Assembly: GCA_044892525.1 (NCBI GenBank)
Contig: CM097887.1
Span: 34,782,001-34,846,000 of the forward strand
DNA: 64,000 bases
Direction of reading: 5' to 3'
DNA from: Schmidtea polychroa
Lineage: Eukaryota
In this document: piece by piece, positions 1 through 61,737 of the stretch
Numbering within the stretch: the stretch's first letter is position 1
Layout of the letters: each line of letters opens with the position of its first letter
Notes under the pieces: model-generated
Told to the model about the DNA's origin: nothing
Database searches by the model: none
The model's input: the letters and a program-made list of their open reading frames with translations, nothing else
Program-made: the position numbers and the translations under genes

Positions 1-59
1 CGGAGGCTAACTTGACTCCTTTCCAGACACCCAATATGATTTGACAAAATGATCTCCAT

Positions 60-196
60 CATGTGTACCCATGACGACGAGTCATGTTGGTGCTGTACAC
101 ATGGGTTGGAATCTGTGAGCAGGTAAGCCACTGTGATAGGACTACTCCTCACAGTATTCGCCGTTCGGGTTCGTGAATGCCGTTAGAAGGACTTAC
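60..196 (-). ncRNA. LTR-associated structured RNA motif, copy C1
   Basis: Minus strand reads GTAAGTCCTTCTAACGGC..AACCCG..[AATACTGTGAG/CTCACAGATT stem enclosing GAGT-hairpin-TACCTG]..[CATGTGTAC/GTACACATG stem with AGCACCAA bulge and CATGAC/GTCATG hairpin]. Homologous to six other copies in the window. Confidence 0.75.
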
Positions 197-480: not shown

Positions 481-1168
481 CTACATTTCACATTCAACTA
501 ACATAGCTGCAATGTCTGACTCTAAAGTTGGGTCTGGTACATGCATCGAACTGTCGACTGGGATGGTCCTGTATTGTGGAGTGGCAAGTAGGACTGGAGC
601 AGGTTGTGAAGGAACTTGGCTAACTGCTGTGACGGTGAACAACGTCGCTTACAAGGCCGATATCTCGTAACGGCGTTTCTTTGTCTTTTCGGCTCAGGTT
701 AGACGCTTCTTTTTCTGTGGATTCGACTGGGCTGCGATGGTAGAGATATTCTCTGGAACAGCAGGTGATTTCGAGACGCTAGCGAGAGTCGACTGTAAAT
801 ATGACATATGGTATTACAGCGTCATCGATTTGATGGTGAATTGGGAATACATTCCCTTTATACTCGCTAATCCGACGCTTCAGCTCCGCCTCGGAGTAGA
901 TTTGGTGCAAGGCCTCCGACTGAGCCTTGATTTTGAGACGTTGACATCGGCTTTCTTCGAGCAAGCTGTATCGGTAGTGCTCAAGCCGTAGGATCTTTTT
1001 ATTAGCGTCTTTCATAAGTGGTGGGGCAAACCACTTGCCCTCCAGCGTGTCGATACACTTTATGAGAACTCCAACATATTCGTTCAACTTTTGTAGGCTG
1101 TCATTTTTATCGGCACACGAGAAACACGGTCTCGGGCCGGTCGGTGGGAGATTCGGTTCTGACATCAA
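481..1168 (-). pseudogene. LTR-borne novel ORF family, copy A (frameshift plus 2 stops)
   Basis: MSEP..RPCFSCADKN..LEGKWFAPPLMK..LRLEHYRYSLLEESR..GNVFPIHH. Continues in a shifted frame as NPQKKKRLT*AEKTKKRRYEISAL*..DIAAMLVECEM*. TTTGTTTAG acceptor 3 nt before the ATG at 1165. Confidence 0.8.
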
Positions 1169-2656: not shown

Positions 2657-2962
2657 GTAGAAAAAATATAACATTCACATCATCGAACAATTTGTTTCAT
2701 AGTTATGCAAAAAGACTGTTTCGTTGAGGTAGTAATTAGGTCCCATATAGGTCAGAATTGGTAATATGGGCAGATCCTTGCTCAAATTTTTTGAATGGCA
2801 CGCTTAATAACATGAATTATTATAGAAAATCTAGGAAAACATTTATAAAATGAGAAATAAGGGCGAATCCCTGTGCAAAATTTTTAAAATTAACATTAGT
2901 AATGAAGACCATAATTAATCGAAAAAAGGACAACAATCTAAGAAAAATGAAGATATAATGAA

Positions 2963-3107
2963 TAGTAGTTCTAGTGGTAGAGCTCATTGATTTTCAGCCA
3001 CTATGTACATTACCAACATGGTTGTTGCCATGGATACGCAGATGGTTAAAAGTAATCATGAAGGCGGTCAGGAAAGAGTCGATGACACACCTCTTAAACG
3101 CCAACGA
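2963..3107 (+). ncRNA. Structured RNA motif copy C6 (internally deleted) plus LTR-end-like CGCCAAC
   Basis: AGTTCTA-GTGG-TAGAGCT hairpin and GTAC-ATTACCAA-CATGG..CCATG. Region 2760-3107 aligns with 57400-57847. Confidence 0.65.
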
Positions 3108-4743: not shown

Positions 4744-6024
4744 TATAAATCTTACCGTTTACCCAAATTTCATCATCACAGAACTTCCACAAATCCAACC
4801 TCTTTTGTATGGAACTTGTAGTTTTGTAAGACTGGATACTTTTAGTAATTAAAATTTGTCAGATTTTTTATAACTAATTTTTATTCAAAAACATTTATTT
4901 AGTAAACAATTATTTTATAATTATATATAAAAATTAATTAATTATTCAAATGATATAGTTTATTAAATATATGTAATACTTACATTAATAATAGGTGATT
5001 TCGAAAAGACAACTGGTTTCAAATCGGGACTAACAAGATTCTACAATTGAATATAAAATTTTATTACAATTTTAAATTACTAACATTTCTATCCATATTT
5101 GTTGATTAATAGTTAAAATTTAAACAACATAATAAATAAGGCAATCGTTAAATTTTATCGTTCATAGTAATATAACATAACAACGTATATATAATAAACA
5201 AAAATAACTCTTGTAATAAAAATATATTTATATTTTTCCAATTATAATAAGAAAATTTCAATTTTATAAGTTATTTTGAACTCTTAACTGAATTTCTATA
5301 AATCTAACTTATATATATTAAATTGTTACGGCAAATGAAAATGATGTCAATTTTAAAAATGAAAAATTAACAATTATTTGAGGGAGCAACATTATTACAT
5401 TGAAAGTTAAAAGGTTCTTGTGAACTTCTTATTTCAAGAATTTCTACGATTAAAAAATATCAATCACAATTCAAGATTAGTTCTTATATAATTTGTATAA
5501 GTCATCTCTCACGATGATTGAGTTTGATCCTCCCATGTACAATTGTTGAAAATAATAATGTAAGGTCGACACCCGAAATATTGCAAATGTTTTAATGCAG
5601 CAACAAAAAATAAGCACAGATCAGCATTAAGCTAAATCAAACCAACTCGAAGTTGCTGGGTTGATGGTTTACACGAGGACTAATAAAACCATTTGTGTTG
5701 TCTCTAACCCGATTTAACATTGTTCTATCCCTTGAAATCCATAGCGATATGACGTTAGTGATGTGCTAAATAGATGAATACTCATAAAGGAGAGTTTCCT
5801 AATTTTCTCGCCATTTCAATAATTCAACAGAGAATGTAAATCATTTATTAATTACATTTTTAATTACACTCATAACTATGGAATAAGTTTACTAGAATTA
5901 TGTTGGAGCGCCACTATGTCGACACAAGTTTTAACACCTGTCTAAATGATGAAGGTTAATTACCCAATTTACAAATACCGATTCTCGAACCTTAGTTTTA
6001 CCCCACACGATTGTTCACTCGATA

Positions 6025-6144
6025 TGGCACCCGTGATTCACATCATGTTGGTACTGTGCAATGGCGGCGAAACATGGTGAAGCAGGTGAGCCCTTGCCTC
6101 AGGACTTCGACTTACCCCTATTGATAGCCGATAGAAGGACTTAC
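6025..6144 (-). ncRNA. Structured RNA motif copy C2 (partly deleted)
   Basis: GTAAGTCCTTCTATCGGC, AGTCCT-GAGGCA-AGGGCT hairpin, CACCTG, AGTACCAACATG. Confidence 0.7.
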
Positions 6145-6370: not shown

Positions 6371-7179
6371 TCAAAATGTTCCAATCACATGAATAGAGGC
6401 TGATTGTCTATAAAGCGTCTGCTGTGGCTTCTGCGAAAAGTTCGTCTTGATCGAAGGACTCAGCTGCATTTTCATCCCAGGGCGTATTCGTTGGAGGTAT
6501 GACACGAAACTGAAGAGATGGCGCGATGGGCTTGGATGTAAAAGCTTAAATGTAAAAGCTTGGATGGCTGCCTGAGCACTGTTGGCCATTAGCTTACCAT
6601 CCCTCTTGGCCTGTAGAACCTTCTTCTTTTTATTTCGCTCTGCACGAGTCAGCTGTCGTCTTTTCGGCTTACTCGGTTGCACTAGAAGAGTAGTTACGCC
6701 AGGTGGTGAGATAGGCTAAGGTACTATTTGACTAGTGCCGGTGATGTAGACGTTGGAGGTCGCAGGAGAGAGAAGAGATTCCACACAACCCTTACTTGAT
6801 TTTCCAGATGGCTGTCGAGCGAAATCCTGGGGATAATGATGAATCGGAAAGACGTTATCAGCTTTCGCGATTGGTATATTAACTATCTTCTTGGTGACGG
6901 TCGCCTGCACGTAGACCTTGTGCAGTGCCCCGGTTTGCTCTTTTATCAATAATCTCTGCGTCCTACTTTCCTCTACCAGGCGTAGCGACAATGCTTGCTT
7001 CTAGCTAGTTTCTTTTGGACTTCCTTCATTTGTGTAGGAGCGAACCACATCCCTTCTAACTGATCGATTTTTCGTTTTAACAGGCCTATCTGATCCTGTA
7101 AGATTTTGATGATTGCATTTTTATCGGCGCACGAATAACATGGCTTGAGGGTCGATGTTGTGGATGGATTTCCGCACAT
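6371..7179 (-). pseudogene. LTR-borne novel ORF family, copy B (frameshifted)
   Basis: KPCYSCADKN..LEGMWFAPTQMK, then VEESRTQRLLIKEQ..DNVFPIHH, then KPKRRQLTRAERNKKKK, across three frames. TTTTTCTGAAG acceptor 3 nt before the ATG. Confidence 0.8.
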
Positions 7180-7661
7180 TTTCTTCAGAAAAATAAGAAT
7201 GTATATGAAAACTACACACTACAAACAGACGACTAGAAAACGCCGTCGAAATTTGTTTTCAGAGTTCAGTGGATTGTTGCTTAGGATTTACCTTGTTGTA
7301 TTGATATGGGTGATTGCGATTAACGCACATGTTTTGTTATCTATCCTAATTATTTTGCTTTTTAGTGTTGACATTGAGACCAGGTGGTAGTTCGTTATTG
7401 GTTATCTCTGCTTATTTTATCAGTATCAACGATTTTCATATACCTCGCTGATTAACCATGTGTTTAAGTTTAAATATTCTCACGTGGTTTCGATATTTTA
7501 GGCGACTTTCTTCTGTTCTTCTCTTTTATTTAATTACGATAACGAATAAGATTGATTACTGAAATTTTCTCCAATTCTCAACCCAACAATTATTTAAAGT
7601 ATCTAAGTGTTTTCTTAACCACAGACGTCCATCATAATCATACGCGTTAGCTCATTCCTTT

Positions 7662-7895
7662 TGTTGGCGCTTAGGGAATGTGTTATTAAAATTCTCTAAG
7701 GTTGCTGTTAAATATATCGTTGATTCTTTGCTAAATGCCTTTTTGACTATTAAACTTTTTCAATCTGTGTACTCATGGGAGCGATCATGTTGATAATGTA
7801 CAAAGCGGTTGAAAATCAATGAATAGGTGAGTCCCACTGCTGGAACTACTCCTCGTTGCATTTTCGAGTTCATAACTGCCGATAGAAGGTCTTAC
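7662..7895 (-). ncRNA. Structured RNA motif copy C3 plus LTR 3' end
   Basis: GTAAGACCTTCTATCGGC, AGTTCCA-GCAG-TGGGACT hairpin, CACCTA. Ends AAGCGCCAACA at 7662, 234 nt after the donor. Confidence 0.7.
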
Positions 7896-8042: not shown

Positions 8043-9127
8043 TGTTGGCGTTTACGGGAACAACGAAGAAAACAGAAAATTTAGGTGTTAGTAAATGTGT
8101 CTAGAGAAATTGGAAACTCCCGTAAAACGTCAAATGATTGATTTAAACCGACTAGGTACCCATGGGTTCGACCATGTTGTTAATGTACGGAGTCGTTGAG
8201 AACTAAAAACCAGGTGAGCCTCCATGTTAAGACTACTCTCTGTTAGACTTTCTGAGCGGGTTCTAGACTGTAGATAGAAGGACTTACCTCGACGATCATC
8301 AATCTGAAATCAAGGTCGTTATGCGTTCCTGGATCGTTGTTTTCGTGAGCTAGAGTGAGTTTCTGATACCAGAATCAGCGCAGCGCATGTGTTAGGTCTA
8401 TTACTCATGTAAACTACAACAACAAACAAAAATAAAAAAATTAATAACGAGACAAATGAGGAACATATGTTAGGGTTACGTCCCTGAAAAACCAACAACA
8501 AATACAAAAAACAAAAATGTTAGAACTGCCACATTCGGAGCAAGCGTCAGAGAGCTTTCTGCTCTGCGTCGGCCAGTAGCTGGTCTAGGTCGAACACATC
8601 GTCCGAACCTAGGGACCAAGAGAAATCCGTGCTGAAAGTCTGCATATCGATCATTTTTATTGTTGTTATTTTCATTTTAGATTTCAATCAATCTGATAGG
8701 TATATTTCATTTTTTGTTTTAATTCTTTGATTTTATTTTAAATTTATTTATTTTTCTTTTCCATCTGACTGGTTGAATAATCGCCATCTGATATCTTTCT
8801 TATCCCATGGTAAGATGATACTTTTTGCTATTTTTGTGTCTTTTTTCGGCGATTTGTGTTATTCTTGTGCCTTTAAATTATGTTTCGTGTGCAAATACTT
8901 GCTTTTTATCGACTTTATTACTTTTGTTTTAATTATTTTTATTCATGTATTATTTATTTTTGTTGTTCTTGGTGTTATTTTTGATTTTGAATATTTTTGG
9001 TGCATTTTATTTGTCGTGTGGGGTCATCTCAGCTGACTATTTACCTTCAATTATTTACTAAATGAAAATTTTAAGAAAAGTAGGAAAAGAAAGAACAGAT
9101 ATTGTTGTTTCTGGGCTTAGCCCAACA
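8043..9127 (-). mobile_element. Internally deleted copy (F) of the ORF-bearing LTR element, with ORF C-terminus (8548-8654) and RNA motif C4 (8150-8287)
   Basis: TGTTGG...CCCAACA termini, flanks TTCA/TTCT (3 of 4 match). VFDLDQLLADAEQKAL* matches the copy E tail FVLEQLLQEAEADAF. Motif stems GACTCCGTAC/GTACCTAGTC and AGTCTT/GAGGCT. Confidence 0.7.
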
Positions 9128-9935: not shown

Positions 9936-9977
9936 ATAGTACTGATGAGAGCCAAAAGCTCGAAACTAGTCTACTAT
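9936..9977 (+). ncRNA. Minimal type I hammerhead ribozyme (Penelope pLTR/retrozyme type)
   Basis: ATAGTA-CTGATGA-GAGC(CAAAA)GCTC-GAAA-CTAG-TC-TACTAT: perfect stems I and II, intact core, palindromic stem III (ACTAGT), GUC cleavage triplet. Confidence 0.85.
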
Positions 9978-35369: not shown

Positions 35370-37156
35370 TCATGGCGTCAATGTCACTGGAAGTCGGGGG
35401 ACCTCGAGCAACCTTGTCTGTCCCGCTGGAACGGGGCGATATATTTTTTCTGTTGGCGGCGCCTGTTTCTGCGAAATCTCCTTGATTGAGGTTTGAGCGG
35501 CAGATAAGGGGCCATCCATATATTATGTACGCAAAAAAACCACGAATTTTGACACCCCCCTCCCCCTGTTGCATCTCGTACATTTTCACCCCCCCCCCCC
35601 AATGCGTACGTTGCTCGGCGGTCCCAACCCGTGTATTAAAATGCATTAAATATAAACATTTAAAACAATTTCTTTTTAATATAAAATGTATAATATACAG
35701 ATAAACCCATTTAGTTGTTACTGTAATGGTTGTAGATGCGTCTTACGTATGTAATAATTATGTGAGTCAATTAAAAACTATAAAACACGACTAATTACCA
35801 ATCTAATCATAATTGTTCATAGAAGTGTATACACAAAGATATCCTATAACCTAAACTGAATATAATTTAATACAATGAATAACATAAACTAAAAATTGCG
35901 CATTGCAGTTTATCCCTTTAACCATCCTCCGTTTCTAATCCAGTTTGCAACCACTCGAATAAATTCTGAATGACTGGCATCGCGCTGTTCTGCATTTCAC
36001 TGACAAATGGCATCAGAACCACATCATCATCAGCTTCGATTTTACGGAGCAAGAAGATTGATATACTTTTTGATTGGTTAGTTTTTAATAATACGTAAAT
36101 GGCACATCAAGAACATATTGGTATTATTAAAAACTAAAACTATTAAATCAAAAAACATCTCAATCTTTTAAAATTAAATTAGTACCAATAGTAAATAAAT
36201 TCGCATCAATGTTGAATAAAATAGGAAATCACTAAATTTCAAATAATATTGCATTTATACAAGCCTTGCTCTCGACTATATTAAAATATTAAGACTGTAA
36301 TATTGAGAATTCCATGCGTAGCAGTGACAGTATACATGTCGCCTAAGGTCATGTGATAATGCACAGCCCATGCGGTAACCTATTATATATAAAGGTTTCA
36401 TATGGGAGTATTATAACAAATCATTTTATTTTATTCCTTCGCATGCCTTTGTTGGAACACCCTCCTGCATACGCACCCGTACGCAAAACATTCACTCGGA
36501 ACACACACCCCCCTCCCCCCTCGGTGCGTACGTAATATATGAATGGCCCCTAACGAAGCTTCCAATGCCGCGATGGTGTCTCGGCTCTTCTGGTTTTTCT
36601 CCGCTCGTGAAGGGCGTTTACGTTTCTTCGGGGCCGAAATGGTTGCTGAAGCAGATTGGAGAGTCGATGGCGTTGAAGGCACGCTCGGAACTACAGCTGG
36701 CTGGAGGTTCGATGTCTTGGCTGTTCCCGACAAAATCGGCTCGTTGATGGGTGGTAACTGAAATCCATGGCCTGCACAACTAGTCGACAGTCATGACCCA
36801 CTGTCGCTCTGATGGTGATTTGGGAACACGTTGGTTCCATCCTGAATTGGGTATTCTCGTACCGTCTTTGAAATCTAGGCTTCAGTGTAAACCTTGTGAA
36901 GCGCCTCCGATTGGGCCTTGATTGTCAGCCGCTGACACCGGTTTTCTTCTAATAGACTGTCTCGGCAGTGCTCCAATCTCAAGATTTTCGTCTTTTCTTC
37001 TTTCATCTGTGGTGGGGAGAACCACGTGCATTCGTATGTTTCTATACGTTTTTTGATGGCCCCTATGTAAGTATGGAGTTTCCGAATATCTTCATTTTTG
37101 TCCGAGCAAGAAAAGCACGGTCGGAGTTCGTTGTTCGACGAGCTGGGTTCACACAT
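35370..37156 (-). pseudogene. LTR-borne novel ORF family, copy C (split by a MITE)
   Basis: MCEP..RPCFSCSDKN..WFSPPQMK..LRLEHCRDSLLEENR and APKKRKRPSRAEKNQKSR..ALEASL|SAAQTSIKE. The frame is restored by removing 35508-36550 plus one TAA. TTCTTTATAG acceptor 2 nt before the ATG. Confidence 0.8.
35508..36550. mobile_element. TAA-TSD MITE (Zator/Harbinger-like)
   Basis: TIRs GGGGCCAT(C/T)CATATATTA(T/C)GTACGCA, exact TAA TSD. Confidence 0.85.
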
Positions 37157-39411
37157 ATCTATAAAGAAGAAAATTTTCGTCATAGTCTGGAAATAGTTAT
37201 TTGGATATCCTAATGAAGTCAGATGGATTTATAAAAATGTCTCGTTAAATTTCGGTTTTACTCGAAGGAGAAGTTATATATATCTTAATGAACTACCATA
37301 TAGAGAAATCACGCAAGACCACCGCCGCTTTGGCCGGTTTCAGTCGATGAGGTACATTGCTCAGAAAAACAGGTTTAAATTGAAATCTCAAGTCAAAAAA
37401 CTTTGTTGGGAAACAAACAAAATGTACATGTAAAGCATACACACCATATATAAACAAACATTAAATATTAATAATCGGTGTAGTTTCTCTATTCCCTCTA
37501 CTAATTTAGTCGGGTTCATCATACATTCGAGCAGCGAAATGATAGCTTAGAATATAATACATCATACGTAAAGTTTGTCCTAATGACGGGAATAACCGGG
37601 AAGGACTTGATCGAAAACGAAAAACGCATTTACCAAATTAAATTAATTCGTTTCCCTGGCACCTCGGTAGTTTTTCCCAATTAATTCACTCAGGATTGTC
37701 GAAATATCAATGTAATTATAACCTGATCCTCTTACATAATTAAATTAACAGTCAATATCGAGGTGTTATTGATGAGACGATGCAATGCCTTAGCATCAAT
37801 ATTCGCAATGCGTGTAGTTATGTTGGTTTCGCTATTTGTATGATGATGTGATTTTTCTTTACATCAGTGCCCGCAATGCATCTAGCTATGTTTATTTTTG
37901 TCATTACAATTGCAACTATGAGTTTTGATCTACCCACCTGACGCTCAATCTCGGATTTATCTGTCGGGTAATGAATTGTTCTCATTGACAGCTATACTGA
38001 TCATTTCCTATTAGAGAGTGGTGTCTTTTCATCTGCTGCATTTTTCCACTGTGATTATTTATCAGTTTCTAATCATGATAAAATCGCTAAATGCCAAAAC
38101 ATGACAAAGATAACTAACAGAGAGTGTGTGTAAGAGGCATCGTTGAAGACAGGCAATGACGGCTTATCTTATCTTGGACAGTAAATATTTATGATTTGCT
38201 TACTATGAAATTAGATTTTTTAGACCGACAAGACAATATCCACGGAGAATGTCTGGATTGATCGGGCGAATTCTCCATCGATTAAACAAAAATTATCAGG
38301 TTCGGGAAATTCCCGTTGACTTTGCCCTATCAAGATAAATCGATTTGCTGGAACAAAGTAGGTAGACGCTACTTTTATACATGACGAATGTAAAGGCGAT
38401 CCTCTTTTACAGGACTATTGAGGCGAAAGGTGGTCTGCTGATGATACTATGAAGACACGACTACGGATTGCCTGACGATGGCGAGTAGAGAAGGCGAAGC
38501 TTCGCTCCGGGCGATTAACGATAGTTGAACTTGATGGAATTATGATTATCAGTTTGGAATTTCATCTAAATCTCTAACTCGATCACACCTAAATAAAGAC
38601 CTCTGGATTTTCATCTCACTCTCATTAGTCCGACTCGGAGTTTCTCCACTCCCCACGACACACCCGAGAACCGTAGACATTGCTACCCACCGTCCTCGCA
38701 TCATCATGAGGGACAGATCGACTCAAATGAATATGATAAAAATGGAAATATCATTTAAAATTGTAATTCATATCACGAATGATCAATCAACACAATTAAG
38801 TATAAATAATTTACCTGGCGACTATGCCATTTGGATTTTCAATCATGATACCTTCGGCCAACTTCCCATCCATCCATCAAAACATCACATAATTACTTCA
38901 TATTCAAGTTCGGCGAGAGTTCTGACTACTTTTACATTCGATAACCTCCAACACCACCCAATCATCGTTTTCATACTCTCGGTTGATAAAAATTTCCCGC
39001 AACAGTGTGTTAGTCATTCATTCCATGTTTCTGTTCTTCATTGGATCTTTTCCGTGTCTTCAAAATAATGTTTGGCATTCCTCGGCATCATGATCGAACT
39101 CCCAGATAGCACCGTCGCCAGTCCCGTAAAGAAGAAAGAAGTCCTCATTATTTAAAAATAAAAATTTATTTAATTGAATCTTCAAATATCTACTACATGT
39201 CTTCGTTATATCAATTAAATCTATCATGACAAACAATTTCAAACCATACCTATAATCTCGAAATTGAATTAGTAAAGCTGAATCGGCAATGAGCTATTTC
39301 GCAATATCTCCTTAACAGTTCGGATTTCCCAAAAAACAAATCTTTTCTTTGCAATCGATTCTGATGAACAGGTAGTGATGGTTATTTCTTCCTAGTCGAG
39401 TGAGTCTATAG

Positions 39412-42254: not shown

Positions 42255-43924
42255 TTTCCAATTTAGTGAGTAGTAGATTAAACTGAGCGCATCATAACAC
42301 AATTTTTTTAGTTAGGATAGAGTAAATTTGTCTCAGGAGATTTAGTAAGGTAAACCAATTTTCCCACTGTCAGAATGACGTCAAATCGGCACACAAGGCT
42401 ATCGTAAGAAGATGAAATTTTTTGCCGAAAGGGCTACAATTAGGAAATTTACTAGAAAATTGTATATTCGTTAATATGCACAAAAGATTAAAATAAGTAC
42501 CTAATATGAAAATCCCACAGTAGAAAACACCAGCCTAGATGAGTATGACTAATGCATTATACAAATAGCCAAGCTAATTTAGCAATCTTTAAAATTGATT
42601 TAGGAAAATTGAATAACGACATCAACTTTTCCTTTTGAGTAATCACGGGATTATTATTAGACAAATAAGTTATAGACAATTAACATGTCCAATAAATATA
42701 TGTAAGTGATAATAAATTAGAAAGTTTAGTAATAGACATAAGGATAACGAAAAACTTCACTGTTCTGCATAAACTTTTTTAGTTAAATAAATAATTAAAA
42801 TTCGCTGTCGAAGAAATCCAAGTGAAACCCATTAATTGCAGTTGGATTTAGGCAAAATTCCCGACACAATTTTCATTCATAATTTAGTGCTGTTTCAGAT
42901 CATAGGATGAAGCAATTCTCGTCTAGCAACCTGAGAGTAAAGGCATCACAGTAGAGGCTCCCAACGTCGACCTTTCACCGAATAATATTCACTCGTTCAC
43001 GGTGTCTGAGAGATAGTTTACCAAGAGCATAAACACTGGAAATGACCAGTCACCATTCTAACGCCTAGTCAAACGCGTAAGATCCGAATAAACCTTGATT
43101 TTTCATACTCGCAATGTGTTTAGGTTTACAAAATCAATAACATCAACATCGGTTGGTGAAACGCCGTTACTATACAACAGGTGATAGACGAGTATAACGA
43201 TTCAGGACAGTTCATCAACAAGGTATTAACTGCCAAGCCTACTGATTAATACACAAATTGAACAGCTACCACCTGATTTTTTGGTTCAACTATCCACGGC
43301 AGTTTTGTTTTTGATTTTTATCACAGATCACTCACCATTCAGTTTCATCACGTTAAATAACGATACTGCTTTACAATCTCCTCTAGTTTCATTTAATGTT
43401 TATGACATCAGTAGTTTTTTCTTTAAATTTTGTGCATGCGGTTGTCTATTTTTAATCTGTCTCAAATTATTATCTTATAACATAATATATACAGGGTTAT
43501 ACAGACTTACTGATTAATCTCATTCACTATAGTCCTTCACTAATCTTCATTAATCCATTGGGTTGCTATCTACTGATATCACATTGCTATCCACCAAAAA
43601 TTTCATTGAATGATAAAGACGTTTGGGCCCATCGGGAGTCGTCGAATAACAACGTTCATGTTTAACCTGTTCTCAATTACTAAAATGCTGTAAAACACAT
43701 TCGAAGATTAGATCGAATTTTTTTTGCCGATATAATTTGATTTAATTTCTAAATTTAATAATTATTAAACAATCACTGGTCTAACCAATAAATTCCGTTG
43801 TCACCCCCTGTTGAATTTAGCTCTTACCGACTGTTGTTGAGTGACGAGTGGCTGACATATATATGTTGAGTGAAAATTATACTCGGATTCATATGATATC
43901 TAGTCTTAATGATTCGATTTAGAA

Positions 43925-44693
43925 ATGGCTTAACCAAATGCGAAAACCTCCAATCTGCGACCTTGTTTCTCTTGTGCGAACAAGAATGCGTCAATGCTCA
44001 CACTGCAAACCAAAATTGGCCATTTGAAGAAACGAATCGATCCCATGTAGGGGACATGGTTCACCCCCGTCCAGATGAAACAAAAAAATAAGAAAAAACT
44101 TCCGTCTCGAACACTACAAAGATAGCCCATTAGAAGAGAATCGCTCACAGCGTATCCTCATTCGAGAATGATGTAGAATTCTCCACCAAATGTACACCAA
44201 CTCAGAACTCAGGAATCGTATCGCAGAATGTCATGCTGCATATCAAGTGAACACCTTTCTCGTCACCATTTGACTGAAGGTTCAAGTTCACCAAAACGAT
44301 CCACATGTCGAGGACATGGGAACAGTAAAGTTGCGTTGCCTGTTCCAGAGGTGATCTACGTTGGTACTAATGTGGCCCAGTTGCCACCGCGGCGCCTGTC
44401 ATGGACACGGCTCTATCCATCGCAACTGAAAACCCGAAACGCAAATCCTGCACTCGGGCGGAACGGACGCAGCGTCAGCGCGAAAAATAGGCAGAGTCGG
44501 AAGATACTCTAGCTGCCACCCATGCCAAAGAAGCCACCCAGATACCAGCCACACTAGAAACTTCAAAACGCCCGTCGTATAGAATAATATCCGCCTCCGG
44601 TACACAAGACAAACAGATTTTGTCCTCGAACAGCTGTTGCAGGAAGCCGAAGCGGATGCGTTTTGGGAGTCATCTACCCCAAACCCAACCTAA
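43925..44693 (+). pseudogene. LTR-borne novel ORF family, copy E
   Basis: LRPCFSCANKN..WFTPVQMK..LRLEHYKDSPLEENR..NPKRKSCTRAERTQRQREK..FVLEQLLQEAEADAF, with several stops and frameshifts. GATTTAG acceptor 2 nt before the ATG. Confidence 0.8.
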
Positions 44694-44933
44694 CGGTCTC
44701 ATTTCTTCTTCGACTCTGTTCGCCTGTAATATGCGTTAACTCTGTCGATATTCTGTAATAATTATAATATATATTTGTTCCGAAAATTTGCACTTGAATG
44801 TGTTTGGTTACATCCTCTTTGAATGCGGTTAGAAATGAAGAATAACTGATGGTTGTAATTTGGTCGCGCGGTAAATCTTGATTCACGTTCTCCAACCAGT
44901 ACCAGTTGGACGATAATAGTTCTGATTAGAAAG

Positions 44934-45174
44934 GTAACACCTTCTATCGGCACTCTGGAACCTGTGTAGTTGTAACGCAGCAGCTAACCTGATCTATAGT
45001 TTTCGCCAACTTGGGGCATTACCAATATTGACTACTTTCGTATGATTTAAGAATCATGTGGGTGTTTCGAATGGTTGATTTTGAAAGACTAAGTATGATG
45101 ATAAAAGAATAAGATGACAGATGCATTCTAGACTACCTGAATGATGTGTGTCAACCTGAAGGGAAACCCCAACA
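44934..45174 (+). ncRNA. Structured RNA motif copy C9 plus LTR 3' end
   Basis: GTAACACCTTCTATCGGC, AGTTGT-AACGCA-GCAGCT hairpin, AACCTG, ATTACCAA. Ends CCCCAACA at 45174. Confidence 0.7.
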
Positions 45175-49905: not shown

Positions 49906-50045
49906 CCTATCGGATATTTCCATAATATAGTAATTGCAAAAAATGTATATCTTTCTTTTTCATTGAAAATAATCCAACTAATGTTCTTCTAATATATTTC
50001 TAATATAATTTTCACTAATATCTTCAGTTAAGCTAGTATTGGTAT

Positions 50046-51003
50046 TGTTGGGTTTTAGTTAATTTAAGTCAGTAACCTCTGACTCCTTGTGTCCTTTTAA
50101 TCAAAGCAATAAACTACCCAACTTATATTTGAATCACAAAAATATATTCTTTCCTCAACAAAAAATAATCTATAATCAAAGTTAAGTTTGACCGATTCTC
50201 CGCTCGGCGTTGATCCTTTGACAAAAGATAATATTCACTTTTTATTTCCTTAGGTTCTTTTGACCAACGTCTTCCTTTTTCTATTTGATTTGATCCTTTT
50301 CACCTTTTCGTATTCCTATTCTATATCTTCTTTTTCCCTAATCTCCCTAATTCGTTTCTATCTCTCACCTATTCTCGTCTTTTCTTACCTTAACTGAGGC
50401 AAAATGCCGATTTGCTCTGATTTTCCCTTTCCTTATATACTCTTCGAAATCGGGATAACAAATGGTTATTGCCGAGCCAATCTCTCACTTGACATTCGAC
50501 TCCACATATCTGTCACCCATAATGGTCCAACGAACAAAGATAATTAATGGCCCGTCCGGCCTTTCTACACGCACTATCTTCTCCTTATTCTTTTCCCATT
50601 AATCATTATGTCACGCTAATGGACCCAAATCTGCCTTCTATTTACTTTTCTCTTTGTTTATCCAGCTCGAGTTTTCTTCATCTCTTGGGCTCTTCATTTG
50701 CTCGGGTTTGCCGTTAGCTCGAGTTTCCCATTAGCTCGGGTTTTCTATTAGCCAATTAATTAATTAATTAACGTTTTCTGTTTTAACACATTTGAATGCT
50801 TTTCGACCCTTTCTAACCATTTTCTGATAAATCCCTAATCATCATCTTGTTGACCATTAGCTAATCTATACCTGTCCCGTTTTCCCAATTCGATGATTTT
50901 ACAATTTATTGATTTTTCTCGGATTTCCGGATTTTTGCCTTTGGTAACTGCTTTTGCCATTTCCTAATACTGCTTCCATCATACTTTCCTTTACTATCAA
51001 TTC
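50046..51003 (-). mobile_element. Group 2 LTR, truncated at 51003 by another LTR
   Basis: Near-identical to the reverse complement of 15210-16185. Similarity stops at the TGTTGGGG at 51004. Confidence 0.75.
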
Positions 51004-51896
51004 TGTTGGGGTTAAACAGGAGAGGCACAAAATTGAGGTGAAAATCAATAAAAACACCAAATTCAAAATAAAAATTTAAAGTACAAAATATTAATCAAAA
51101 AATTTTAAAAATGAATATTTTCCGGGGGAAACTGGTATGGGCGGATGCTAAATAATGAGATGAGTTCAACTATAATAAAATAAAACAACGGGGGTCCCTA
51201 AAAGGAATAAATTACAAAAAACAAAAATTAATTAAAAATTAATTAACTAATGGAGAACCCGAGCTAATGGGAAACCCGACCTAATGGGAAACCCGACCTA
51301 ATGAAGAACGCGACCTAATGGGAAACCCGAGACAATGAAAAACCCAAGCGATTTGAAAGAACCTGAATTATCAATCAAATTAAGAAAGGCAATTAAATCC
51401 ACTGACTAAAATTAAATTGGGGAGAGTCGTTAAAGGAGACGGACAAATTCCTCAAAGCAATTAGAGCGACAAGAGGAAGCCCAGGGGGAGTTGGACCCAA
51501 ACAAATTTGACAAAGTAAAATCAATTATTGAATGCATATAAAAGCGACCGGCCAGTTAACAGAATACCCAGATAGTCGAAGAAAAAGAAACAACAAGTTA
51601 AGCGAGAGTGACAAAGAAAACTTTCAAGTGAGTATCAATTGAATGATTTAAATCGAACGTACCAGAAAGGGACATCTCCCATTGGAAGATTTATCCCTGC
51701 GTAAGATTTGTAGTTGTACTGAAAAGAGCAGACCAAAAAAAGGTTGTATCAAGTGTATTTGGATTAATAAAAGTGTAATCAAAAGTGTAATTGTATTAGT
51801 CTCAAATAAAGAATTTTGTGTTGCGTTGTTTATTTAATTTCAAAAAGTACACAAAGGAGTCAGACAGTAATACCGACTTGCACAAAATACCCAACA
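51004..51896 (+). mobile_element. Group 2 LTR with tandem TAATGGGAAACCCGA(C/G)C repeats
   Basis: TGTTGGGG...CCCAACA, about five 17-bp repeats at 51247-51335, terminal AGTC..GACT hairpin. No TSD match. Confidence 0.7.
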
Positions 51897-55797: not shown

Positions 55798-57847
55798 TGT
55801 TGGGCTAGAACCGAGAATCGAGAGCTTGTTTTAATGGGTCGGAAATGCATGGCGTGAGAATCGCGCCGGGTTAAATTAAAACACCAATCAATACAAATTA
55901 AAGTACATAACACATTGATGATAAATAAGACCCGGTTGATAAAATAAAGGAACGAAATAAAAGATCGCAATCACTAACACAATTAGGAGAAACATCACAT
56001 TCGGAATAGCTAACAACTAAGAAATAAAATAATAATAAATAAAATAATGGGTAATAAATTAATTAATAATATGAAAAATTTCTAAATTTAAAATAAATCA
56101 TCTAGTAAACTGGTAAAATAATAAAAAGTAGAATAAAAGTAGTAAAATTAGATAAACCATAAAATTTATAAAACTAAATTGTTTAATGAAAACTAAAAAT
56201 AAAACCAACAAAATTATTTAAATTATAAAACTTATAAAACCAAATTGTTTAAATCAATGAAACTAAAGTAACTTATAACTTATTTAAATTAATCTATAAT
56301 TAATCTATAAATTAATCTATAATCTATAAATTAATCTATAACTTATTTAAATTATAAAACTTGTAAAACTAAATTAAAATTAGCAAAAACTATTTAAATT
56401 ATAGAATTTATAAAAATAAATCTTAAAAATTAAAAAAAATTAGAATTTTGATTAATTAAATTAATTAAATTAAAAAATAAGCAATTACACACATTCATGC
56501 ATGCATGCAAAAATTAATCAGAATTGCCTCGCATTCTAATTGAATATAACAACAGAGAATGCGTAGGCGTATAATTCAATCAGTATAAATACTGAGTAAA
56601 ATTTCATTTTTAAAAAAAAATGGAGAAGTCACGCTCAACTGGTTAACTGAAAATCGCTACAGTAGACAATGCAAATCCCGTGGCTCTCGATTGTCAGTTT
56701 TATGCATGCATGGTGAGGTAAATTTGATTTTTGTTAATTTTATGTTAATGATTTATATGTTAATTTTATGTTAAAATTTATATGAAATAATATGTAATTT
56801 TTAGGATTTAGTAATTGAATTTGTTTGGCTGATTTTGTGTCTGTTCATTTTAATTTTAACTTGGAATAATATTTTAATAGGAGTAAGATGAGTTTGATTT
56901 TATTAATGACAAATTTATATGATGTAATTTGTAGGATTGAATAAAATTTTTTAATTGGATTTGTTTTTAATTAATTCTGGAGTCTTGTCTATGATTTTTT
57001 TTTGATAATATGATAATGTAGGTTGGTTTTTTTATGAAATTTATGTGTCGATGGTCTGGGCTGGGGAAAGGTTTGTGGACGGGCGGCACTACGTGCTGTT
57101 GGTCGGCAGATGTTTCGCCAGTTGAGTCCATCGGGGTAGGGAATATAGTTAGGGAGATGAACGGTTAAAGGGGGTAAAATCAATTTGCGATAGTTTAGGG
57201 CCATATTTAGAGTTAGAAAGTATAGGACTTTTATTTTCATAGATATTTTTGAGTTAGGAGAAATATTAGAATAGTTATGAGCTGCTGTCGGTAGAGGAAG
57301 TAGGTTTAGGCAATTTTATAGAAACCACGGATAGTTAAGATATTCGATCGTTCAGGATTAGAAATACAGGCTCAAGTTTTCATGAGAAGTGTGGAAATAT
57401 GTTTATTAACTTGTGAATGAGGGCCAATCCCCGCTCAAATTTTTTGAAGGGTAATTTGGATATTTTAGGGAGTATATAACAACAATTATTAGATGAAAAA
57501 TAAGGGCGGATCCCTGCACAAAAATTTACAAGGGAACAATTGGAAATACACTTAATTTAGGACCACAAATGATCTAAAAACAGCATACATAGTGAATAAT
57601 GACGTAAGACCTTCTATCGGCCGTCTAGAACCCGAAGAGAAAAACAATGGGGAGTAGTTTTAGCAATAGAGCTCACCTGCTCATTGTTTTTCACCTTTGT
57701 GTACAGTACCAACATGGTCGTCGCCATGGGTACACAAATGGTTTAAATTGCAATAGTCATGGAGGTGCTTAGGAAAGAGTCGAACGATTATGATTACCCT
57801 AAACGTACTTTAAAATGGAAGATTGACACACCTCTAAGTAACCAACA
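55798..57847 (+). mobile_element. 2050-bp solo-LTR-like element with the RNA motif but no family ORF
   Basis: TGTTGGGCTAGAACC...ACCAACA, exact TSD AAAG, motif C5 donor 244 nt before the end. Confidence 0.8.
57604..57738 (+). ncRNA. Structured RNA motif copy C5 (best preserved)
   Basis: GAAAAACAATGGG/CTCATTGTTTTTC stem, AGTTTTA-GCAA-TAGAGCT hairpin, TTTGTGTAC/GTACACAAA stem with AGTACCAA bulge and CATGG/CCATG hairpin. Confidence 0.8.
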
Positions 57848-59161: not shown

Positions 59162-60675
59162 ATTCCGTAATTTGGACTCAGAATAAATTTTTTTACAGTC
59201 AATAATTTTTTCTTAATATATATTTTGCTAAAATTGGGTTGAAATCGTAGTTAAATAACTTAAATAAACTTAACTACATAATTAAATATCCCGTTGTTTT
59301 AATATTATAAATTAAATTGCGTAATTTTGAATTAATTGTATGCATGAATTTTCGTACAGTTATATGTTATATAGTTATTTTCCATTATTTTGACTTATTG
59401 ATGAATTTATATTATAATAGACTTATATTTATTTAATATATATTTTATAGACCTTTTCAAAAGAAATCCGGTTACAAATAAATTTGGAAAGATCTAATGG
59501 AAGGTCATATGGCGAAATCTCTAAGAAATATGGTATTTCGCGTTCCACTATCCAATATATGGTTAAAAATGATGGCAGAAGTAAGAAGAAGAATGGACCT
59601 AAAGAGAAATTAAGTAAAGGAGACAAACGACGTATCCTTGCATTAGTAAATGATTCATTTACTAAAAAAGTTAAATGTTCGTCAACTGATATTAAAAAGA
59701 CTATGCAATTAAATGTATCAAAACACACAATTTGCAGGGTTTTAAAAAGTATGAATTATAATTACAAAAATGTACCATCAAAATTCAAATTATCTTATAA
59801 AATGAAACAACGAAGGTTTGAGGCAGCTAAAGAATTTCTCATTTCCGGAGTCCAATGGAATAATGTCGTTTTTTCTGACGAAAAATACTTTACTTTGGCA
59901 GGATGCGATTCGTACTATTGTTGGATAAAAGATAACCAAACACCTAGACGAATAAAAAAGGTCATAAGATCTCCGGGTATTATGCTTTGGGGCATGATTC
60001 TCCCAAATGGTCTACTCTCTTATGAATTGCTTAAAGGAAAAATAAATTCTAAGAAATATATCACATTAATAGAAGAAAAGGCAATTCCGATAATTAAATT
60101 AAATATGCCTCAACAATTTATATTCCAACAAGATAATTGTCCAATTCACGTTTCTAAGGAAGCGCATGAGTTTTTCAGTAATTCGAATACCGACATTTTA
60201 AAATGGCCACCTTACAGCCCTGATCTAAATATTATTGAAAATATTTGGCATGAGCTTTCAAGTAAAGTGTATAATGATGGACCGATAAAGAACTTAGTGG
60301 AATTACAAAGGAAAATTAAATCCGCAGTATCAATATTTAATGAAACCTCCCATCAATATGTAGGTAATTTGTATTCATCAATGCCGTCCAGATTGGTTTC
60401 AGTTATCATTAAGCGCGGGGACAGACTAAAATATTAGGAATTATTAGAATTAAACGTTTCGATAGACTAAAATATGAGAATTGGTCAGGTGTACGAATAT
60501 TTATGCTACAGTAAAATATTGATGTTTGTATTTTGTAAACATAATATATTCTTTGCATGTCCTTTATTACTGATATGATATTGTCTCATCAAACTTAATA
60601 AGTGTATAAATAAAAATTAATAATAAATTGCATTGGTTAAAATTTTAGGTGTACGAAAATTTTTGATACGGGCGG
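59162..60675 (+). mobile_element. Tc1-family DNA transposon (left end degenerate, inferred)
   Basis: Right end ..GTGTACGAAAATTTTTGATACGGGCGG-TA. Repeated GTGTACGAA direct repeat (60490, 60649) with an inverted copy near 59350. Confidence 0.75.
59484..60437 (+). CDS. Tc1 transposase, DD34E
   Basis: FSDE, QQDN and PPYSPDLNIIE with 34 residues between D and E, plus an N-terminal HTH. The open frame starts just after a TTATAG acceptor, so the true start is probably in an upstream exon. Confidence 0.92.
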   Translation: MERSNGRSYGEISKKYGISRSTIQYMVKNDGRSKKKNGPKEKLSKGDKRRILALVNDSFTKKVKCSSTDIKKTMQLNVSKHTICRVLKSMNYNYKNVPSKFKLSYKMKQRRFEAAKEFLISGVQWNNVVFSDEKYFTLAGCDSYYCWIKDNQTPRRIKKVIRSPGIMLWGMILPNGLLSYELLKGKINSKKYITLIEEKAIPIIKLNMPQQFIFQQDNCPIHVSKEAHEFFSNSNTDILKWPPYSPDLNIIENIWHELSSKVYNDGPIKNLVELQRKIKSAVSIFNETSHQYVGNLYSSMPSRLVSVIIKRGDRLKY

Positions 60676-61737
60676 TAGATGCGATTTAAGGCCTCAGATT
60701 GAGATTTGATGGTGAGCCTCAGGTTGCGATTCTCTTTTAGAAGGCTGTCCCTACAGTGTTCCAACCTTAAGATTTTTCGATTCGTCTCCTTCATTTGTGG
60801 TGGGGTGACCCAGGTTCCTTCCAAGAGCTCGATGAGTTTCTTTAAGGCCTCAACTTCCGACTGTAACTGTTTTACAGCTGCGTTTTTATCTGCGCATGAG
60901 AAGCACGGACTGAGTCACGATCTCGGCAGCGTTGGTTCTGCCATTTCTACAACGAAGGTGTTTAAGGACAGTTATTTCAACTTTCGGAGGGTTAGTCCGT
61001 TGAAAAATATTCCATTATCATCATTCAAATTACCCAACCATCTAAAGAAGTGGGAAAGGGAAAGAAAACAAAAAAACCCCGGGAACTAGTTGTCCCCACT
61101 ACTCATGCAATCACAATATATTGTACCGAATATATATAAGTTATATATAGGCTAATTGAATTTACACTTTAATTGCGAGATATAGACACGCAACCTTATT
61201 TTCCTCAATCTTGTCGAGTTGCTCTCAGATTTATTTTTAATTAAACTATCCGCGTAGATTATATCAGGTTGGTGTGTAAATCTATCAGTCGATTTATACG
61301 CGATTTCCTCGACTATGTCTCCACGGCACATTTGTTTATGTATTATTGTTATTACCAAATGTCACTCTGATGTAATCACTATGATTATTAACGGAAAATC
61401 CCTAAATGGTGGTAATAAACACTTAAAACTAGCAGATCGTCAATCAAGTAAGCATAGATCGAATTCCTAATGCGGTGCTGATAAACAATTACGGAGTGTC
61501 TGACTTTGATCTGTCAGATGGTTATCATGGGCCATTAGTGGAAAATGGCGCTCGTCTTATGGTCGATTCACGTATATGTATAACTATGATTTGTTGGAAA
61601 TTCGTGGGCTTTACACGCTTGTCACTGTTCGATGAGAGATTTCAGCCTAGTAATGTGTATTCGGATTTGGAATTTATTTTGCTGTATTCAACCTACTGAA
61701 AGACGGATTTATTGGCCTAAGCGAGTTAATAAGCGAG

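What the first reader, a model, noticed from the sequence alone, without database searches (positions are those of the whole stretch)
57604..57738. Novel covarying RNA structure in seven LTR 3' regions
Seen in sequence: copies at 60-196, 2963-3040, 6025-6144, 7765-7895, 8150-8287, 44934-45060 and 57604-57738 keep their pairing while changing sequence. Hairpin P3 variants are AGTTTTA/TAGAGCT, AGTTCCA/TGGGACT, AGTCTT/GAGGCT, AGTCCT/AGGGCT, AGTTCTA/TAGAGCT and AGTTGT/GCAGCT. Outer stems are TTTGTGTAC/GTACACAAA, CATGTGTAC/GTACACATG and GACTCCGTAC/GTACCTAGTC. The enclosing stem is GAAAAACAATGGG/CTCATTGTTTTTC versus AATACTGTGAG/CTCACAGATT. The unpaired segments (GAGT, CACCTG, AGTACCAA, CCTTCTATCGGC) are conserved in sequence. 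Frequent G-U pairs work only on the ORF-sense strand, which points to RNA rather than DNA structure. I could not match it to any snRNA, ribozyme, group I/II intron or RNase P/MRP motif I know. Inference: a packaging, dimerisation, protein-binding or catalytic element.
Basis: partly seen in the sequence, partly recalled or inferred. Interest (0 to 1): 0.88.

Follow-up and report, generated by a model that had tools for sequence, protein, structure and literature searches.

The report
Conserved RNA fold in old repeats
Seven worn-out copies of a mobile-element-like repeat share a roughly 140-base two-hairpin RNA fold that kept its base pairs while its letters changed. It is probably a signal the element's RNA once needed for copying or packaging, and the evidence does not show that the copies are LTRs or that the fold is a ribozyme.

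Summary
The copies are only 50-75% identical, yet 80% of the base-pair cells stay paired. Only 35-42% stay paired when the partners are slid by 1-3 columns. Eighteen of 37 pairs show changes on both sides, and 0 of 500 shuffles reach the observed values. Internal loops and an 18-base single-stranded 5' segment are the most conserved parts, and the hairpin loops vary freely. No Rfam family matches.

The fold is the first 140 bases of a module of about 244 bases that ends in CCAACA in every copy that reaches that point. Different sequences lie upstream of it. In three copies this is a degenerate open reading frame (ORF-A) for a coiled-coil, basic protein. In three it is a promoter-like stretch of about 190 bases. 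One is unique. The window holds no LTR pairs, no primer-binding site and no reverse transcriptase, integrase or gag domains.

The best reading is a cis-acting RNA element in the shared terminal module of a dead retroelement-like family. That module could be an R-U5, a pseudo-LTR or a 3' untranslated region. A new ribozyme is possible but unsupported. No further copies could be retrieved from any searchable collection.

The parts
57604..57746 (+). Structured core, best-preserved copy (the finding). 5' single-stranded 18-mer at 57604-57621. Domain 1 at 57639-57692, a 13-bp enclosing stem plus a 2-bp step plus the P3 hairpin at 57656-57673. Domain 2 at 57696-57738, a 9-bp stem, an 8-nt bulge and an inner hairpin.
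   Evidence: MFE -46.5 kcal/mol, z = -3.6, 0 of 200 shuffles as stable. Covariance-model score 152.9 bits.
57604..57847 (+). Full shared module of this copy, from GTAAG to the terminal CCAACA (243 nt).
   Evidence: Homology to the other copies ends here.
57411..57603 (+). Upstream region of about 190 nt, shared only with the copies at 2928 and 7756. It contains a duplicated motif of about 83 nt (a small GGG..CCC hairpin followed by a T-run) and a TATATAA.
52..196 (-). Structured core copy. Its module runs off the start of the window. ORF-A lies upstream on the same strand.
   Evidence: (131 bits).
2928..3106 (+). Partial module copy. The 5' segment and the CACCTG segment are deleted, and it ends in CCAACG. 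AGAAT lies on both sides of the unit 2759-3106.
   Evidence: (67 bits).
5901..6144 (-). Module copy (core at 6014-6144), downstream of ORF-A copy 2.
   Evidence: (99 bits).
7662..7895 (-). Module copy (core at 7756-7895), preceded by its upstream region of about 150 nt at 7896-8042.
   Evidence: (129 bits).
8043..8287 (-). Module copy (core at 8143-8287). Its CCAACA end directly abuts the start of the next unit, a head-to-tail junction. Its own upstream flank is unique.
   Evidence: (135 bits).
44934..45174 (+). Module copy (core at 44934-45060), the most diverged. The 5' strand of the enclosing stem is deleted and the inner hairpin is replaced. It lies downstream of ORF-A copy 4.
   Evidence: (87 bits).
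484..1168 (-). ORF-A copy 1 (CxxC, coiled coil, basic motif). Broken by at least 1 frameshift and at least 2 internal stops.
6374..7218 (-). ORF-A copy 2. Broken by at least 1 frameshift and at least 1 internal stop.
36434..37228 (-). ORF-A copy 3. It has 2 internal stops, and no module follows it.
43934..44736 (+). ORF-A copy 4. Broken by at least 2 frameshifts and at least 3 internal stops.
60648..60914 (-). ORF-A copy 5. It has at least 1 stop near its start, and its 3' part is missing next to a Tc1/mariner transposase gene.

Best explanation
The fold is a cis-acting RNA element in the shared terminal module of an old, now inactive, retroelement-like repeat family.

The module is about 244 bases long. 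It runs from a strongly conserved 18-base single-stranded segment that starts with GTAAG to a fixed CCAACA end. Different element bodies carry it. One kind encodes a coiled-coil protein with an Arg/Lys-rich motif (ORF-A). Another kind is short and non-coding, with a promoter-like head.

Shown here:
- the copies, the module boundaries and the varied upstream contexts;
- the retention of pairing through compensatory changes;
- the conservation pattern (internal loops more conserved than stems, stems more than hairpin loops).

Inferred:
- The active source lineages were selected to keep this fold on the ORF-sense transcript.
- The fold was the handle by which the replication machinery recognised the RNA. 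That machinery could be a reverse transcriptase supplied in trans, the element's own basic protein, or both. The purpose would be template choice, priming or packaging.
- In an LTR or pseudo-LTR layout the sharp start of conservation would be the U3/R boundary, that is, the transcript start. In a retroposon layout it would be the start of a shared 3' UTR.
For: - Seven copies and no more.
- Pairing is retained at 80.5% against 35-42% in the slid controls, 18 pairs have double changes, and 0 of 500 shuffles reach the observed values. This is despite a mean pairwise identity of 61%.
- Column identity is 0.93 for the 5' 18-mer, 0.85 for internal loops, 0.74 for stems and 0.54 for hairpin loops.
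- Module length from GTAAG to the CCAACA end is constant at 233-244 nt in the five copies where it can be measured whole. Flanks diverge right after CCAACA.
- There are three kinds of upstream context.
- ORF-A is collinear with the module at a fixed distance in three diverged copies.
- Homologues of ORF-A found in a 1.8-billion-protein library occur only as pieces of chimeric gene models, as expected of a transposable-element ORF. They carry a coiled coil, an RRRERRR-type motif and PPPY.
- There is one head-to-tail junction between units, and possibly a second. The Penelope-like-element literature describes partial tandems of this kind and non-autonomous elements that share 3' ends (PMC8557442).
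- G-U cells exceed A-C cells 25 to 12 on the ORF-sense strand.
Against: - No reverse transcriptase, endonuclease or integrase is present anywhere in the window, so 'retroelement' is inferred from layout alone.
- Only seven related sequences are available, and related sequences inflate shuffle statistics.
- The structure was taken from one of the seven copies.
- Four copies do not fold better than their own shuffles.
- The strand bias is weak.
- No target-site duplication could be established. One 5-bp match was found, at the copy at 2928; the other flanks checked gave nothing convincing.
- No copy was found outside the window, so neither conservation across species nor expression is known.
Confidence: 0.5

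Rival explanations
1. The conserved block is a structured spliceosomal intron, or a splice-regulating element, kept inside the element. It starts with a consensus 5' splice site (GTAAG) and has an AG about 172 bases later. The hairpins would bring the splice sites together or control splicing. Penelope-like elements are known to retain introns in their pseudo-LTRs.
For: - GTAAG is present in five of the six copies that have this region, and GTAAC in the sixth.
- An AG at the aligned downstream position is present in five of six copies.
- An ATG, GTG or CTG lies about 12 bases upstream.
- ORF-A itself begins right after a TTTAG-like acceptor in all five copies.
- Intron retention in pseudo-LTRs is described in PMC8557442.
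Against: - The last 20 bases before the AG are purine-rich, with no pyrimidine tract.
- The block is 41-50% G+C in a window that is about 32% G+C, which is unlike the surrounding AT-rich DNA.
- One copy lacks the AG and one lacks the whole 3' part.
- Reading frames across the putative junction are not consistent between copies.
- Conservation continues about 70 bases past the AG, to the CCAACA end.
Confidence: 0.13
2. The fold is a new kind of self-cleaving ribozyme. It would play the part that hammerhead ribozymes play in the pseudo-LTRs of Penelope-like elements and in animal retrozymes. The sharp 5' edge of conservation would then be the cleavage site.
For: - Two adjacent helix-internal loop-helix domains have conserved loop bases and covarying stems.
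- Conservation starts abruptly.
- The unit arrangement is tandem or pseudo-LTR-like.
- A hammerhead-like motif elsewhere in the window shows that ribozyme-bearing repeats live in this genome.
Against: - There is no match to any ribozyme family in Rfam, even at E<=10.
- No hammerhead core lies in or near the module.
- The 5' bases cannot form the P1 helix of an HDV-like fold with any downstream segment (read directly from the sequence).
- Nothing here tests chemistry.
Confidence: 0.05
3. The hairpins act at the DNA level, as subterminal structure of a cut-and-paste or single-strand DNA transposon whose ends read TGTTGG...CCAACA. Alternatively, they are palindromes kept complementary by template switching between the arms rather than by selection on RNA.
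For: - Copies occur in both orientations, and one pair (52-196 minus strand, 2928-3106 plus strand) brackets ORF-A like inverted ends.
- The ends match a TG...CA pattern.
- One homologue joins an ORF-A-like piece to a hAT transposase.
- The minus strand also folds moderately well, z = -2.25.
Against: - ORF-A lies on the same strand and at the same distance from the module in three copies.
- In the other well-placed case the flanking copies are direct, not inverted.
- G-U cells outnumber A-C cells 2 to 1, and one U-G pair is kept in six of seven copies.
- The stems are irregular, with conserved asymmetric loops.
- The hAT fusion is one chimeric gene model among eleven.
Confidence: 0.1
4. The module is a retroposed small-RNA gene, a SINE-like derivative of a spliced-leader RNA or snRNA. 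Its layout would be a short leader, a splice donor, two hairpins and an Sm-like site.
For: - The order of features is donor, single strand, two hairpins, then an AUUUUG-like stretch in two copies.
- One copy consists of the module alone, with a unique upstream flank.
Against: - The would-be leader is not conserved.
- The Sm-like site is intact in only two of seven copies.
- There is no Rfam snRNA or spliced-leader hit.
- No tRNA-like part is present.
Confidence: 0.04
5. The fold has no function. The apparent covariation is an artefact of few, related sequences and of taking the structure from the best-folding copy.
For: - There are only seven sequences.
- Shuffle tests ignore relatedness (tool caveat).
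- Four copies do not fold better than their shuffles.
Against: - The slid-partner controls keep relatedness and reach only 35-42% paired cells and 4-8 double-change pairs, against 80.5% and 18.
- Six copies pair in 77% of cells when the source copy is left out.
- RNAalifold finds two of the helices independently.
- Loops and stems show opposite conservation patterns.
Confidence: 0.08

Closest known systems
Pseudo-LTRs of Penelope-like elements and their hammerhead ribozymes (PMC8557442)
   Same: - A terminal region repeats because a truncated copy sits head-to-tail before a full one.
- Inverted neighbours occur.
- Non-autonomous elements share only the 3' end.
- A possible retained intron is present.
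- A conserved structured RNA lies in the repeated region.
- Such elements have been mistaken for LTRs before.
   Different: - No reverse transcriptase or GIY-YIG gene is in the window.
- The fold is not a hammerhead.
- The one hammerhead-like motif in the window lies 1.6 kb away on the other strand and is not part of the module.
- No 30-40-bp tail or microsatellite target was seen.
3' UTR recognition structures of stringent non-LTR retrotransposons and their SINE partners (for example Rfam UnaL2 3' element and R2 3' UTR element)
   Same: - A 3' module with a fixed end is shared between coding and non-coding elements.
- Stems covary while the sequence drifts.
- The module lies downstream of an ORF1-like coiled-coil, basic protein.
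   Different: - No Rfam match.
- No poly(A) or short-repeat tail after the end.
- No clear series of 5' truncations.
- No ORF2.
R-U5/leader structures of LTR retrotransposons and retroviruses, and gag-only 'TR-GAG' elements (PMC4350172)
   Same: - Upstream (U3-like) sequence is variable and the downstream block is conserved, starting sharply.
- TG...CA-like ends.
- One 5-bp flank match.
- One locus has a module copy on both sides of a Gag-like ORF (homologues carry PPPY).
- The conserved single strand next to the hairpins is 18 bases long, the usual length of a primer-binding site.
   Different: - The two copies that flank the ORF are only 54% identical in the structured core and have unrelated upstream parts.
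- Four of five ORF copies have no upstream copy.
- The 18-mer does not begin with TGG and also occurs downstream of the ORF.
- No pol.
Arginine-rich-motif protein and RNA hairpin pairs (Rev-RRE and Tat-TAR type)
   Same: An oligomerising helical protein with an Arg-rich helix is encoded next to an irregular hairpin with conserved internal-loop bases. A weak Pfam REV match to the Arg-rich stretch of one homologue was seen (E = 0.0013, below the cut-off).
   Different: This is purely an analogy. There is no homology, and no evidence that ORF-A binds the fold.

Membership tests
Any Rfam 15 family | Covariance-model score at or above the gathering threshold | tested here: not met
   0 hits in the whole window. 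At E<=10 around three copies there were only unrelated noise hits, with no family shared between copies.
LTR of an LTR retrotransposon | Two near-identical direct repeats flanking an internal region | tested here: not met
   The self-comparison finds no such pair. The only direct pair around an ORF (cores at 7756-7895 and 6014-6144) is 54% identical in the structured core, with unrelated upstream parts.
LTR of an LTR retrotransposon | TG...CA termini with a 4-6-bp target-site duplication | tested here: inconclusive
   Units start with TGAAT or TGG and end in CCAACA. AGAAT lies on both sides of one unit (2759-3106). The other flanks checked gave no convincing match.
LTR of an LTR retrotransposon | Primer-binding site complementary to a tRNA 3' end just after the 5' LTR, and a polypurine tract before the 3' LTR | tested here: not met
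   The sequence after CCAACA never starts with TGG. There are no tRNA genes in the window to compare with. A purine-rich run precedes only one copy (6145-6220).
LTR of an LTR retrotransposon | gag-pol coding capacity (RT, RNase H, IN, PR) | tested here: not met
   No such Pfam domain in 85 ORFs of 75 aa or more or in 117 ORFs of 45-74 aa around the copies. ORF-A itself has no Pfam match.
Penelope-like element pseudo-LTR | Partial head-to-tail tandem of a 5'-truncated copy and a full copy, often with inverted copies nearby | tested here: met
   The copy at 8043-8287 ends in CCAACA directly against the first base of the next unit. A possible remnant of a unit end lies before the copy at 2928. 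Inverted neighbours lie at 52-196, 2928-3106 and 5901-6144.
Penelope-like element pseudo-LTR | Reverse transcriptase with GIY-YIG endonuclease in the family | tested here: not met
   None in the window. The rest of the genome could not be searched.
Penelope-like element pseudo-LTR | Hammerhead ribozyme inside the repeated region | tested here: not met
   No CUGANGA...GAAA core in or next to any module. The only hammerhead-like motif is at 9924-9992 on the other strand.
Non-LTR retroposon 3' module (LINE/SINE type) | Shared 3' region with a defined 3' end across elements with different bodies | tested here: met
Non-LTR retroposon 3' module (LINE/SINE type) | Poly(A) or short-repeat tail, variable 5' truncation, and an ORF2 with endonuclease and RT | tested here: not met
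   No tail follows CCAACA. No RT is present. The evidence for 5' truncation is ambiguous.
Self-cleaving ribozymes (hammerhead, HDV-like, twister, pistol, hatchet, hairpin) | Family-specific conserved core and fold | tested here: not met
   No covariance-model match at E<=10. No hammerhead core. An HDV-like P1 cannot be formed from the 5' bases (read from the sequence).
Self-cleaving ribozymes (any, including new) | Site-specific self-cleavage | not testable with these tools
   No chemistry or RNA-end data are available.

The most novel reading that the evidence does not exclude
The fold is a new class of self-cleaving or otherwise catalytic RNA. It would take the place of the hammerhead in the terminal repeats of a retroelement family that lacks one. 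The abrupt 5' edge of conservation (GTAAG) would mark the processed RNA end.
Probability: 0.05. Interest if true: 0.85.

Novelty: new member of a known kind. Interest (0 to 1): 0.4.

Why it matters
Few cis-acting RNA signals of invertebrate mobile elements have been described. Rfam holds only a handful, such as the R2 and UnaL2 3' elements and the hammerheads.

This is a two-domain fold that stayed paired while its sequence drifted to 50-75% identity. It is shared by coding and non-coding relatives. It would give a handle for classifying an otherwise unclassifiable repeat family and for finding its autonomous partner. It would also let one ask what a coiled-coil, Arg-rich element protein recognises.

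It also shows that 'LTR-like' repeats can be called from raw sequence without any of the defining LTR features being present.

If the fold were catalytic, that would be a major find, but nothing here points that way.

Tried and rejected
- **Rfam.** Searched at gathering thresholds and at E<=10. Nothing found.
- **tRNA scan.** Run to test a primer-binding-site reading. No tRNA genes in the window.
- **Literature search for the 12-mer**. Only unrelated primers.
- **Pattern scans.** Viral contigs gave two chance phage hits. Metagenome contigs were scanned twice and prokaryote genome contigs twice. No relatives, so covariation could not be tested on more copies.
- **Protein route to related loci.**
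  - A word search with ORF-A found nothing.
  - A profile search found 11 homologues, all UniParc-only chimeric gene models with no DNA on record.
  - The intact 743-aa ORF was used to try to name the organism. It found only 45-68% relatives in aphid, brine shrimp, limpet and unnamed contigs. The organism stays unidentified.
- **PDB profile search with ORF-A**. Only weak coiled-coil noise.
- **AlphaFold model of a homologue**. Two confident long helices and the rest disordered, pTM 0.30. That is too poor for a fold search, so none was run.
- **Whole-unit fold**. Not unusually stable (z = -0.8), so this is not a rod-like or viroid-like RNA.
- **Readings of the sequence that gave no consistent, covarying partner:**
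  - long-range pairing of the 5' 18-mer with downstream segments;
  - a closing helix around the whole block;
  - an Sm site;
  - an H/ACA or microRNA-precursor reading;
  - a tRNA-half primer reading.
- **Target-site duplications.** One 5-bp match and one match that needs a shifted boundary. Inconclusive.
- **Coding on the opposite strand.** Rejected, because indels between copies are not multiples of three.
Full report
**What the window is.** The window is AT-rich (about 32% G+C) and has no N runs. It carries a Tc1/mariner transposase gene, hAT fragments and other repeats. It also holds an intact 743-aa ORF whose relatives occur in aphid, brine shrimp and limpet assemblies. It is therefore invertebrate-like eukaryotic DNA. 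I could not name the organism.

- BLAST, a profile HMM and a covariance model with filters off all find the same seven copies and no others. The E-values run from 1e-42 to 8e-18, and the next best hit has E = 0.045.
- A degenerate pattern with 23 fixed bases hits six copies, with none expected by chance.
- The copy at 2928-3050 is partial.
One quoted stem has a 2x2 mismatch and one has a bulge.
- The seven cores are 50-75% identical, with a mean of 61%.

**Is the pairing more than chance?** I took the two-domain part of the minimum-energy fold of the copy at 57604 (-46.5 kcal/mol, z = -3.6). It has 37 pairs in four helices. I counted these pairs on a sequence-only MAFFT alignment.
- 80.5% of cells form standard pairs, against 35-42% when the 3' partners are slid by one to three columns.
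- 18 pairs carry changes on both sides, against 4-8 in the slid controls.
- No shuffle out of 500 reaches any of the observed values.
- A model-based alignment gives the same numbers.
- With the source copy left out, the other six still pair in 77% of cells.
- RNAalifold on its own recovers the P3 hairpin and the second domain.
- Column identity is 0.93 in the 18-base 5' single strand, 0.85 in internal loops, 0.74 in stems and 0.54 in hairpin loops. That is the pattern expected of a functional RNA.

Caveats:
- There are only seven related sequences.
- Four copies no longer fold better than their own shuffles, as expected of decayed copies.
- The strand argument is modest. There are 25 G-U cells against 12 A-C cells, and six of the G-U cells come from one conserved U-G pair.
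- The minus strand of the best copy folds at z = -2.25.

**What surrounds the fold?** The fold is the first 140 bases of a longer shared module.
- Conservation begins abruptly about 12 bases before GTAAG and ends at a CCAACA motif. The distance from GTAAG to the end of that motif is 243, 240, 244, 233 and 243 bases in the five copies where it can be measured whole. Flanks diverge right after the motif.
- The upstream sequence comes in three kinds.
  - Three copies (57604, 2928, 7756) share a region of about 190 bases. It has a duplicated motif (a small hairpin followed by a T-run) and a TATATAA.
  - Three copies (52, 6014, 44934) lie about 230 bases downstream of a degenerate ORF on the same strand, ORF-A. 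ORF-A is collinear between the copies from about 50-150 bases before a PC[FY]SC motif through to the fold.
  - One copy (8143) has a unique flank. Its CCAACA end directly abuts the first base of the next unit, which is a head-to-tail junction.
- Two more ORF-A copies (at 36434 and 60648) have no module.
- All five ORF-A copies are broken:
  - copy 1: at least one frameshift and two stops;
  - copy 2: at least one frameshift and one stop;
  - copy 3: two stops;
  - copy 4: at least two frameshifts and three stops;
  - copy 5: at least one stop, with its 3' part missing.

**What is ORF-A?**
- It has no Pfam match and no word-search relatives.
- A profile of its pieces finds 11 proteins among 1.8 billion (E from 1e-10 to 1e-4).
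- All 11 are UniParc-only gene models in which an ORF-A-like stretch is fused to an unrelated host domain, such as CRAL-TRIO, GDC-P, an SNF transporter, ribosomal L21, subtilase, a tyrosine phosphatase, actin, ABC or hAT. This is what a transposable-element ORF swallowed by gene prediction looks like.
- The homologues share a coiled-coil core, an RRRERRR-type motif and, in two of them, PPPY.
- An AlphaFold model shows two confident long helices and disorder elsewhere.
- ORF-A therefore looks like an ORF1- or Gag-like nucleic-acid-binding protein, but it is not diagnostic of a class.

**Is it an LTR?** This is not shown.
- There are no LTR-type repeat pairs.
- There are no RT, RNase H, integrase, protease or gag domains in 85 ORFs of 75 aa or more, or in 117 ORFs of 45-74 aa in the 25.5 kb around the copies.
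- The sequence after CCAACA never starts with TGG, and there is no consistent polypurine tract.
- At the one locus where copies flank ORF-A in direct orientation (cores at 7756-7895 and 6014-6144), the two cores are 54% identical and have unrelated upstream parts.

Some features do fit an LTR:
- TG...CA-like ends;
- one 5-bp flank match (AGAAT around 2759-3106);
- a TATAAAG about 28 bases before GTAAG in one copy;
- the sharp start of conservation, which would be a U3/R boundary.

The same layout fits the pseudo-LTRs of Penelope-like elements. The literature on those elements describes 5'-truncated copies head-to-tail with full copies, inverted neighbours, non-autonomous relatives that share only the 3' end, retained introns, and past misannotation as LTRs (PMC8557442). 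It also fits a 3' UTR shared by retroposons. Gag-only LTR elements (TR-GAG, PMC4350172) are the LTR-side analogue. I cannot choose between these without the rest of the genome.

**How it most likely works.** Diverged source lineages kept the pairing, so the fold was under selection in the active elements. It lies on the ORF-sense strand, inside the one part that all element types share. The most economical reading is a cis-acting recognition signal on the element's RNA. It would serve template choice or priming by a reverse transcriptase supplied in trans, packaging by the basic ORF-A protein, or both. The conserved internal-loop bases and the 18-base single strand would be the contact sites, and the stems the scaffold. 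This mechanism is inferred. No step of it is shown.

**Rivals.**
- A retained structured intron. GTAAG and a downstream AG are mostly conserved, but there is no pyrimidine tract and conservation runs past the AG.
- A new ribozyme. There is no support beyond the architecture.
- DNA-level hairpins of a transposon end. The consistent ORF-sense orientation and the G-U excess argue against this.
- A SINE derived from a small-RNA gene. The leader is not conserved and there is no Rfam hit.
- An artefact. The slid controls argue against this.

**Search for more copies.** None were found in viral, metagenome or prokaryote-genome contig collections. The ORF-A homologues have no DNA on record. The covariation test therefore rests on seven sequences.

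1. None was entered into a tool or used as evidence.
2. My scripts printed frame translations and stop-to-stop piece coordinates of the degenerate ORF copies, which show where the frames are interrupted. I joined or repaired nothing, and this report gives counts only.

**Verdict.** This is a real structured RNA motif, not in Rfam, in a dead repeat family of uncertain class. It is a good catch but a moderate finding. The LTR label and the catalytic suggestion are unproven.

Noticed in passing
window 9924-9992 (+): Hammerhead-ribozyme-like motif with an intact CUGAUGA...GAAAC core, a 4-bp helix II and a minimal helix III. This is the type found in Penelope-like elements and in animal satellite or SINE repeats. 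Rfam HH9 scores 26 bits, E = 2.5e-4 in a 500-base search, below the gathering score of 52. It is single-copy in the window.
   Followed up: partly
window 29951-32182 (+): Intact 743-aa ORF in a patch of 44% G+C, with no Pfam domain. It has hundreds of 45-68% identical relatives of the same length on short contigs and in aphid, brine shrimp and limpet assemblies. It looks like a widespread, possibly horizontally moving, mobile-element protein.
   Followed up: partly
window 59451-60434 (+): Tc1/mariner transposase ORF (DDE_3 plus HTH_Tnp_Tc3_2), apparently uninterrupted. It lies where the 3' part of ORF-A copy 5 would be expected.
   Followed up: no
window 13322-14424 (+) and 18557-18922 (-): hAT-transposase-like fragments. 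They include a hAT dimerisation domain and match a 1025-aa homologue that also carries an ORF-A-like N-terminus.
   Followed up: no
window 11368-11708, 15202-16187, 50044-51006: Another interspersed repeat family, 70-76% identical over up to 1 kb and unrelated to the module.
   Followed up: no
window 57419-57517, 2766-2874, 8001-8016: A repeated motif in the 190-base upstream region. A GGG(N5)CCC mini-hairpin is followed by CAAA and a run of 3-6 T. It occurs twice in two copies and once in a third. Its function is unknown; it resembles a terminator or the 3' end of a tRNA gene.
   Followed up: partly
five ORF-A starts, in the alignment of 43661-43990(+), 37091-37420(-), 1100-1429(-), 7114-7443(-) and 60879-61208(-): Every ORF-A copy has a TTTAG/TATAG/TGAAG-type acceptor-like sequence directly before its ATG. 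Homologues in another genome are predicted as internal or terminal exons of host genes. The element may be prone to being spliced into host transcripts.
   Followed up: partly
window, one ORF of 75 aa or more (position not determined): One stop-to-stop ORF matches the Pfam SMAP (small acidic protein) family at E = 1.4e-12. It is probably a host gene exon. I did not locate it.
   Followed up: no
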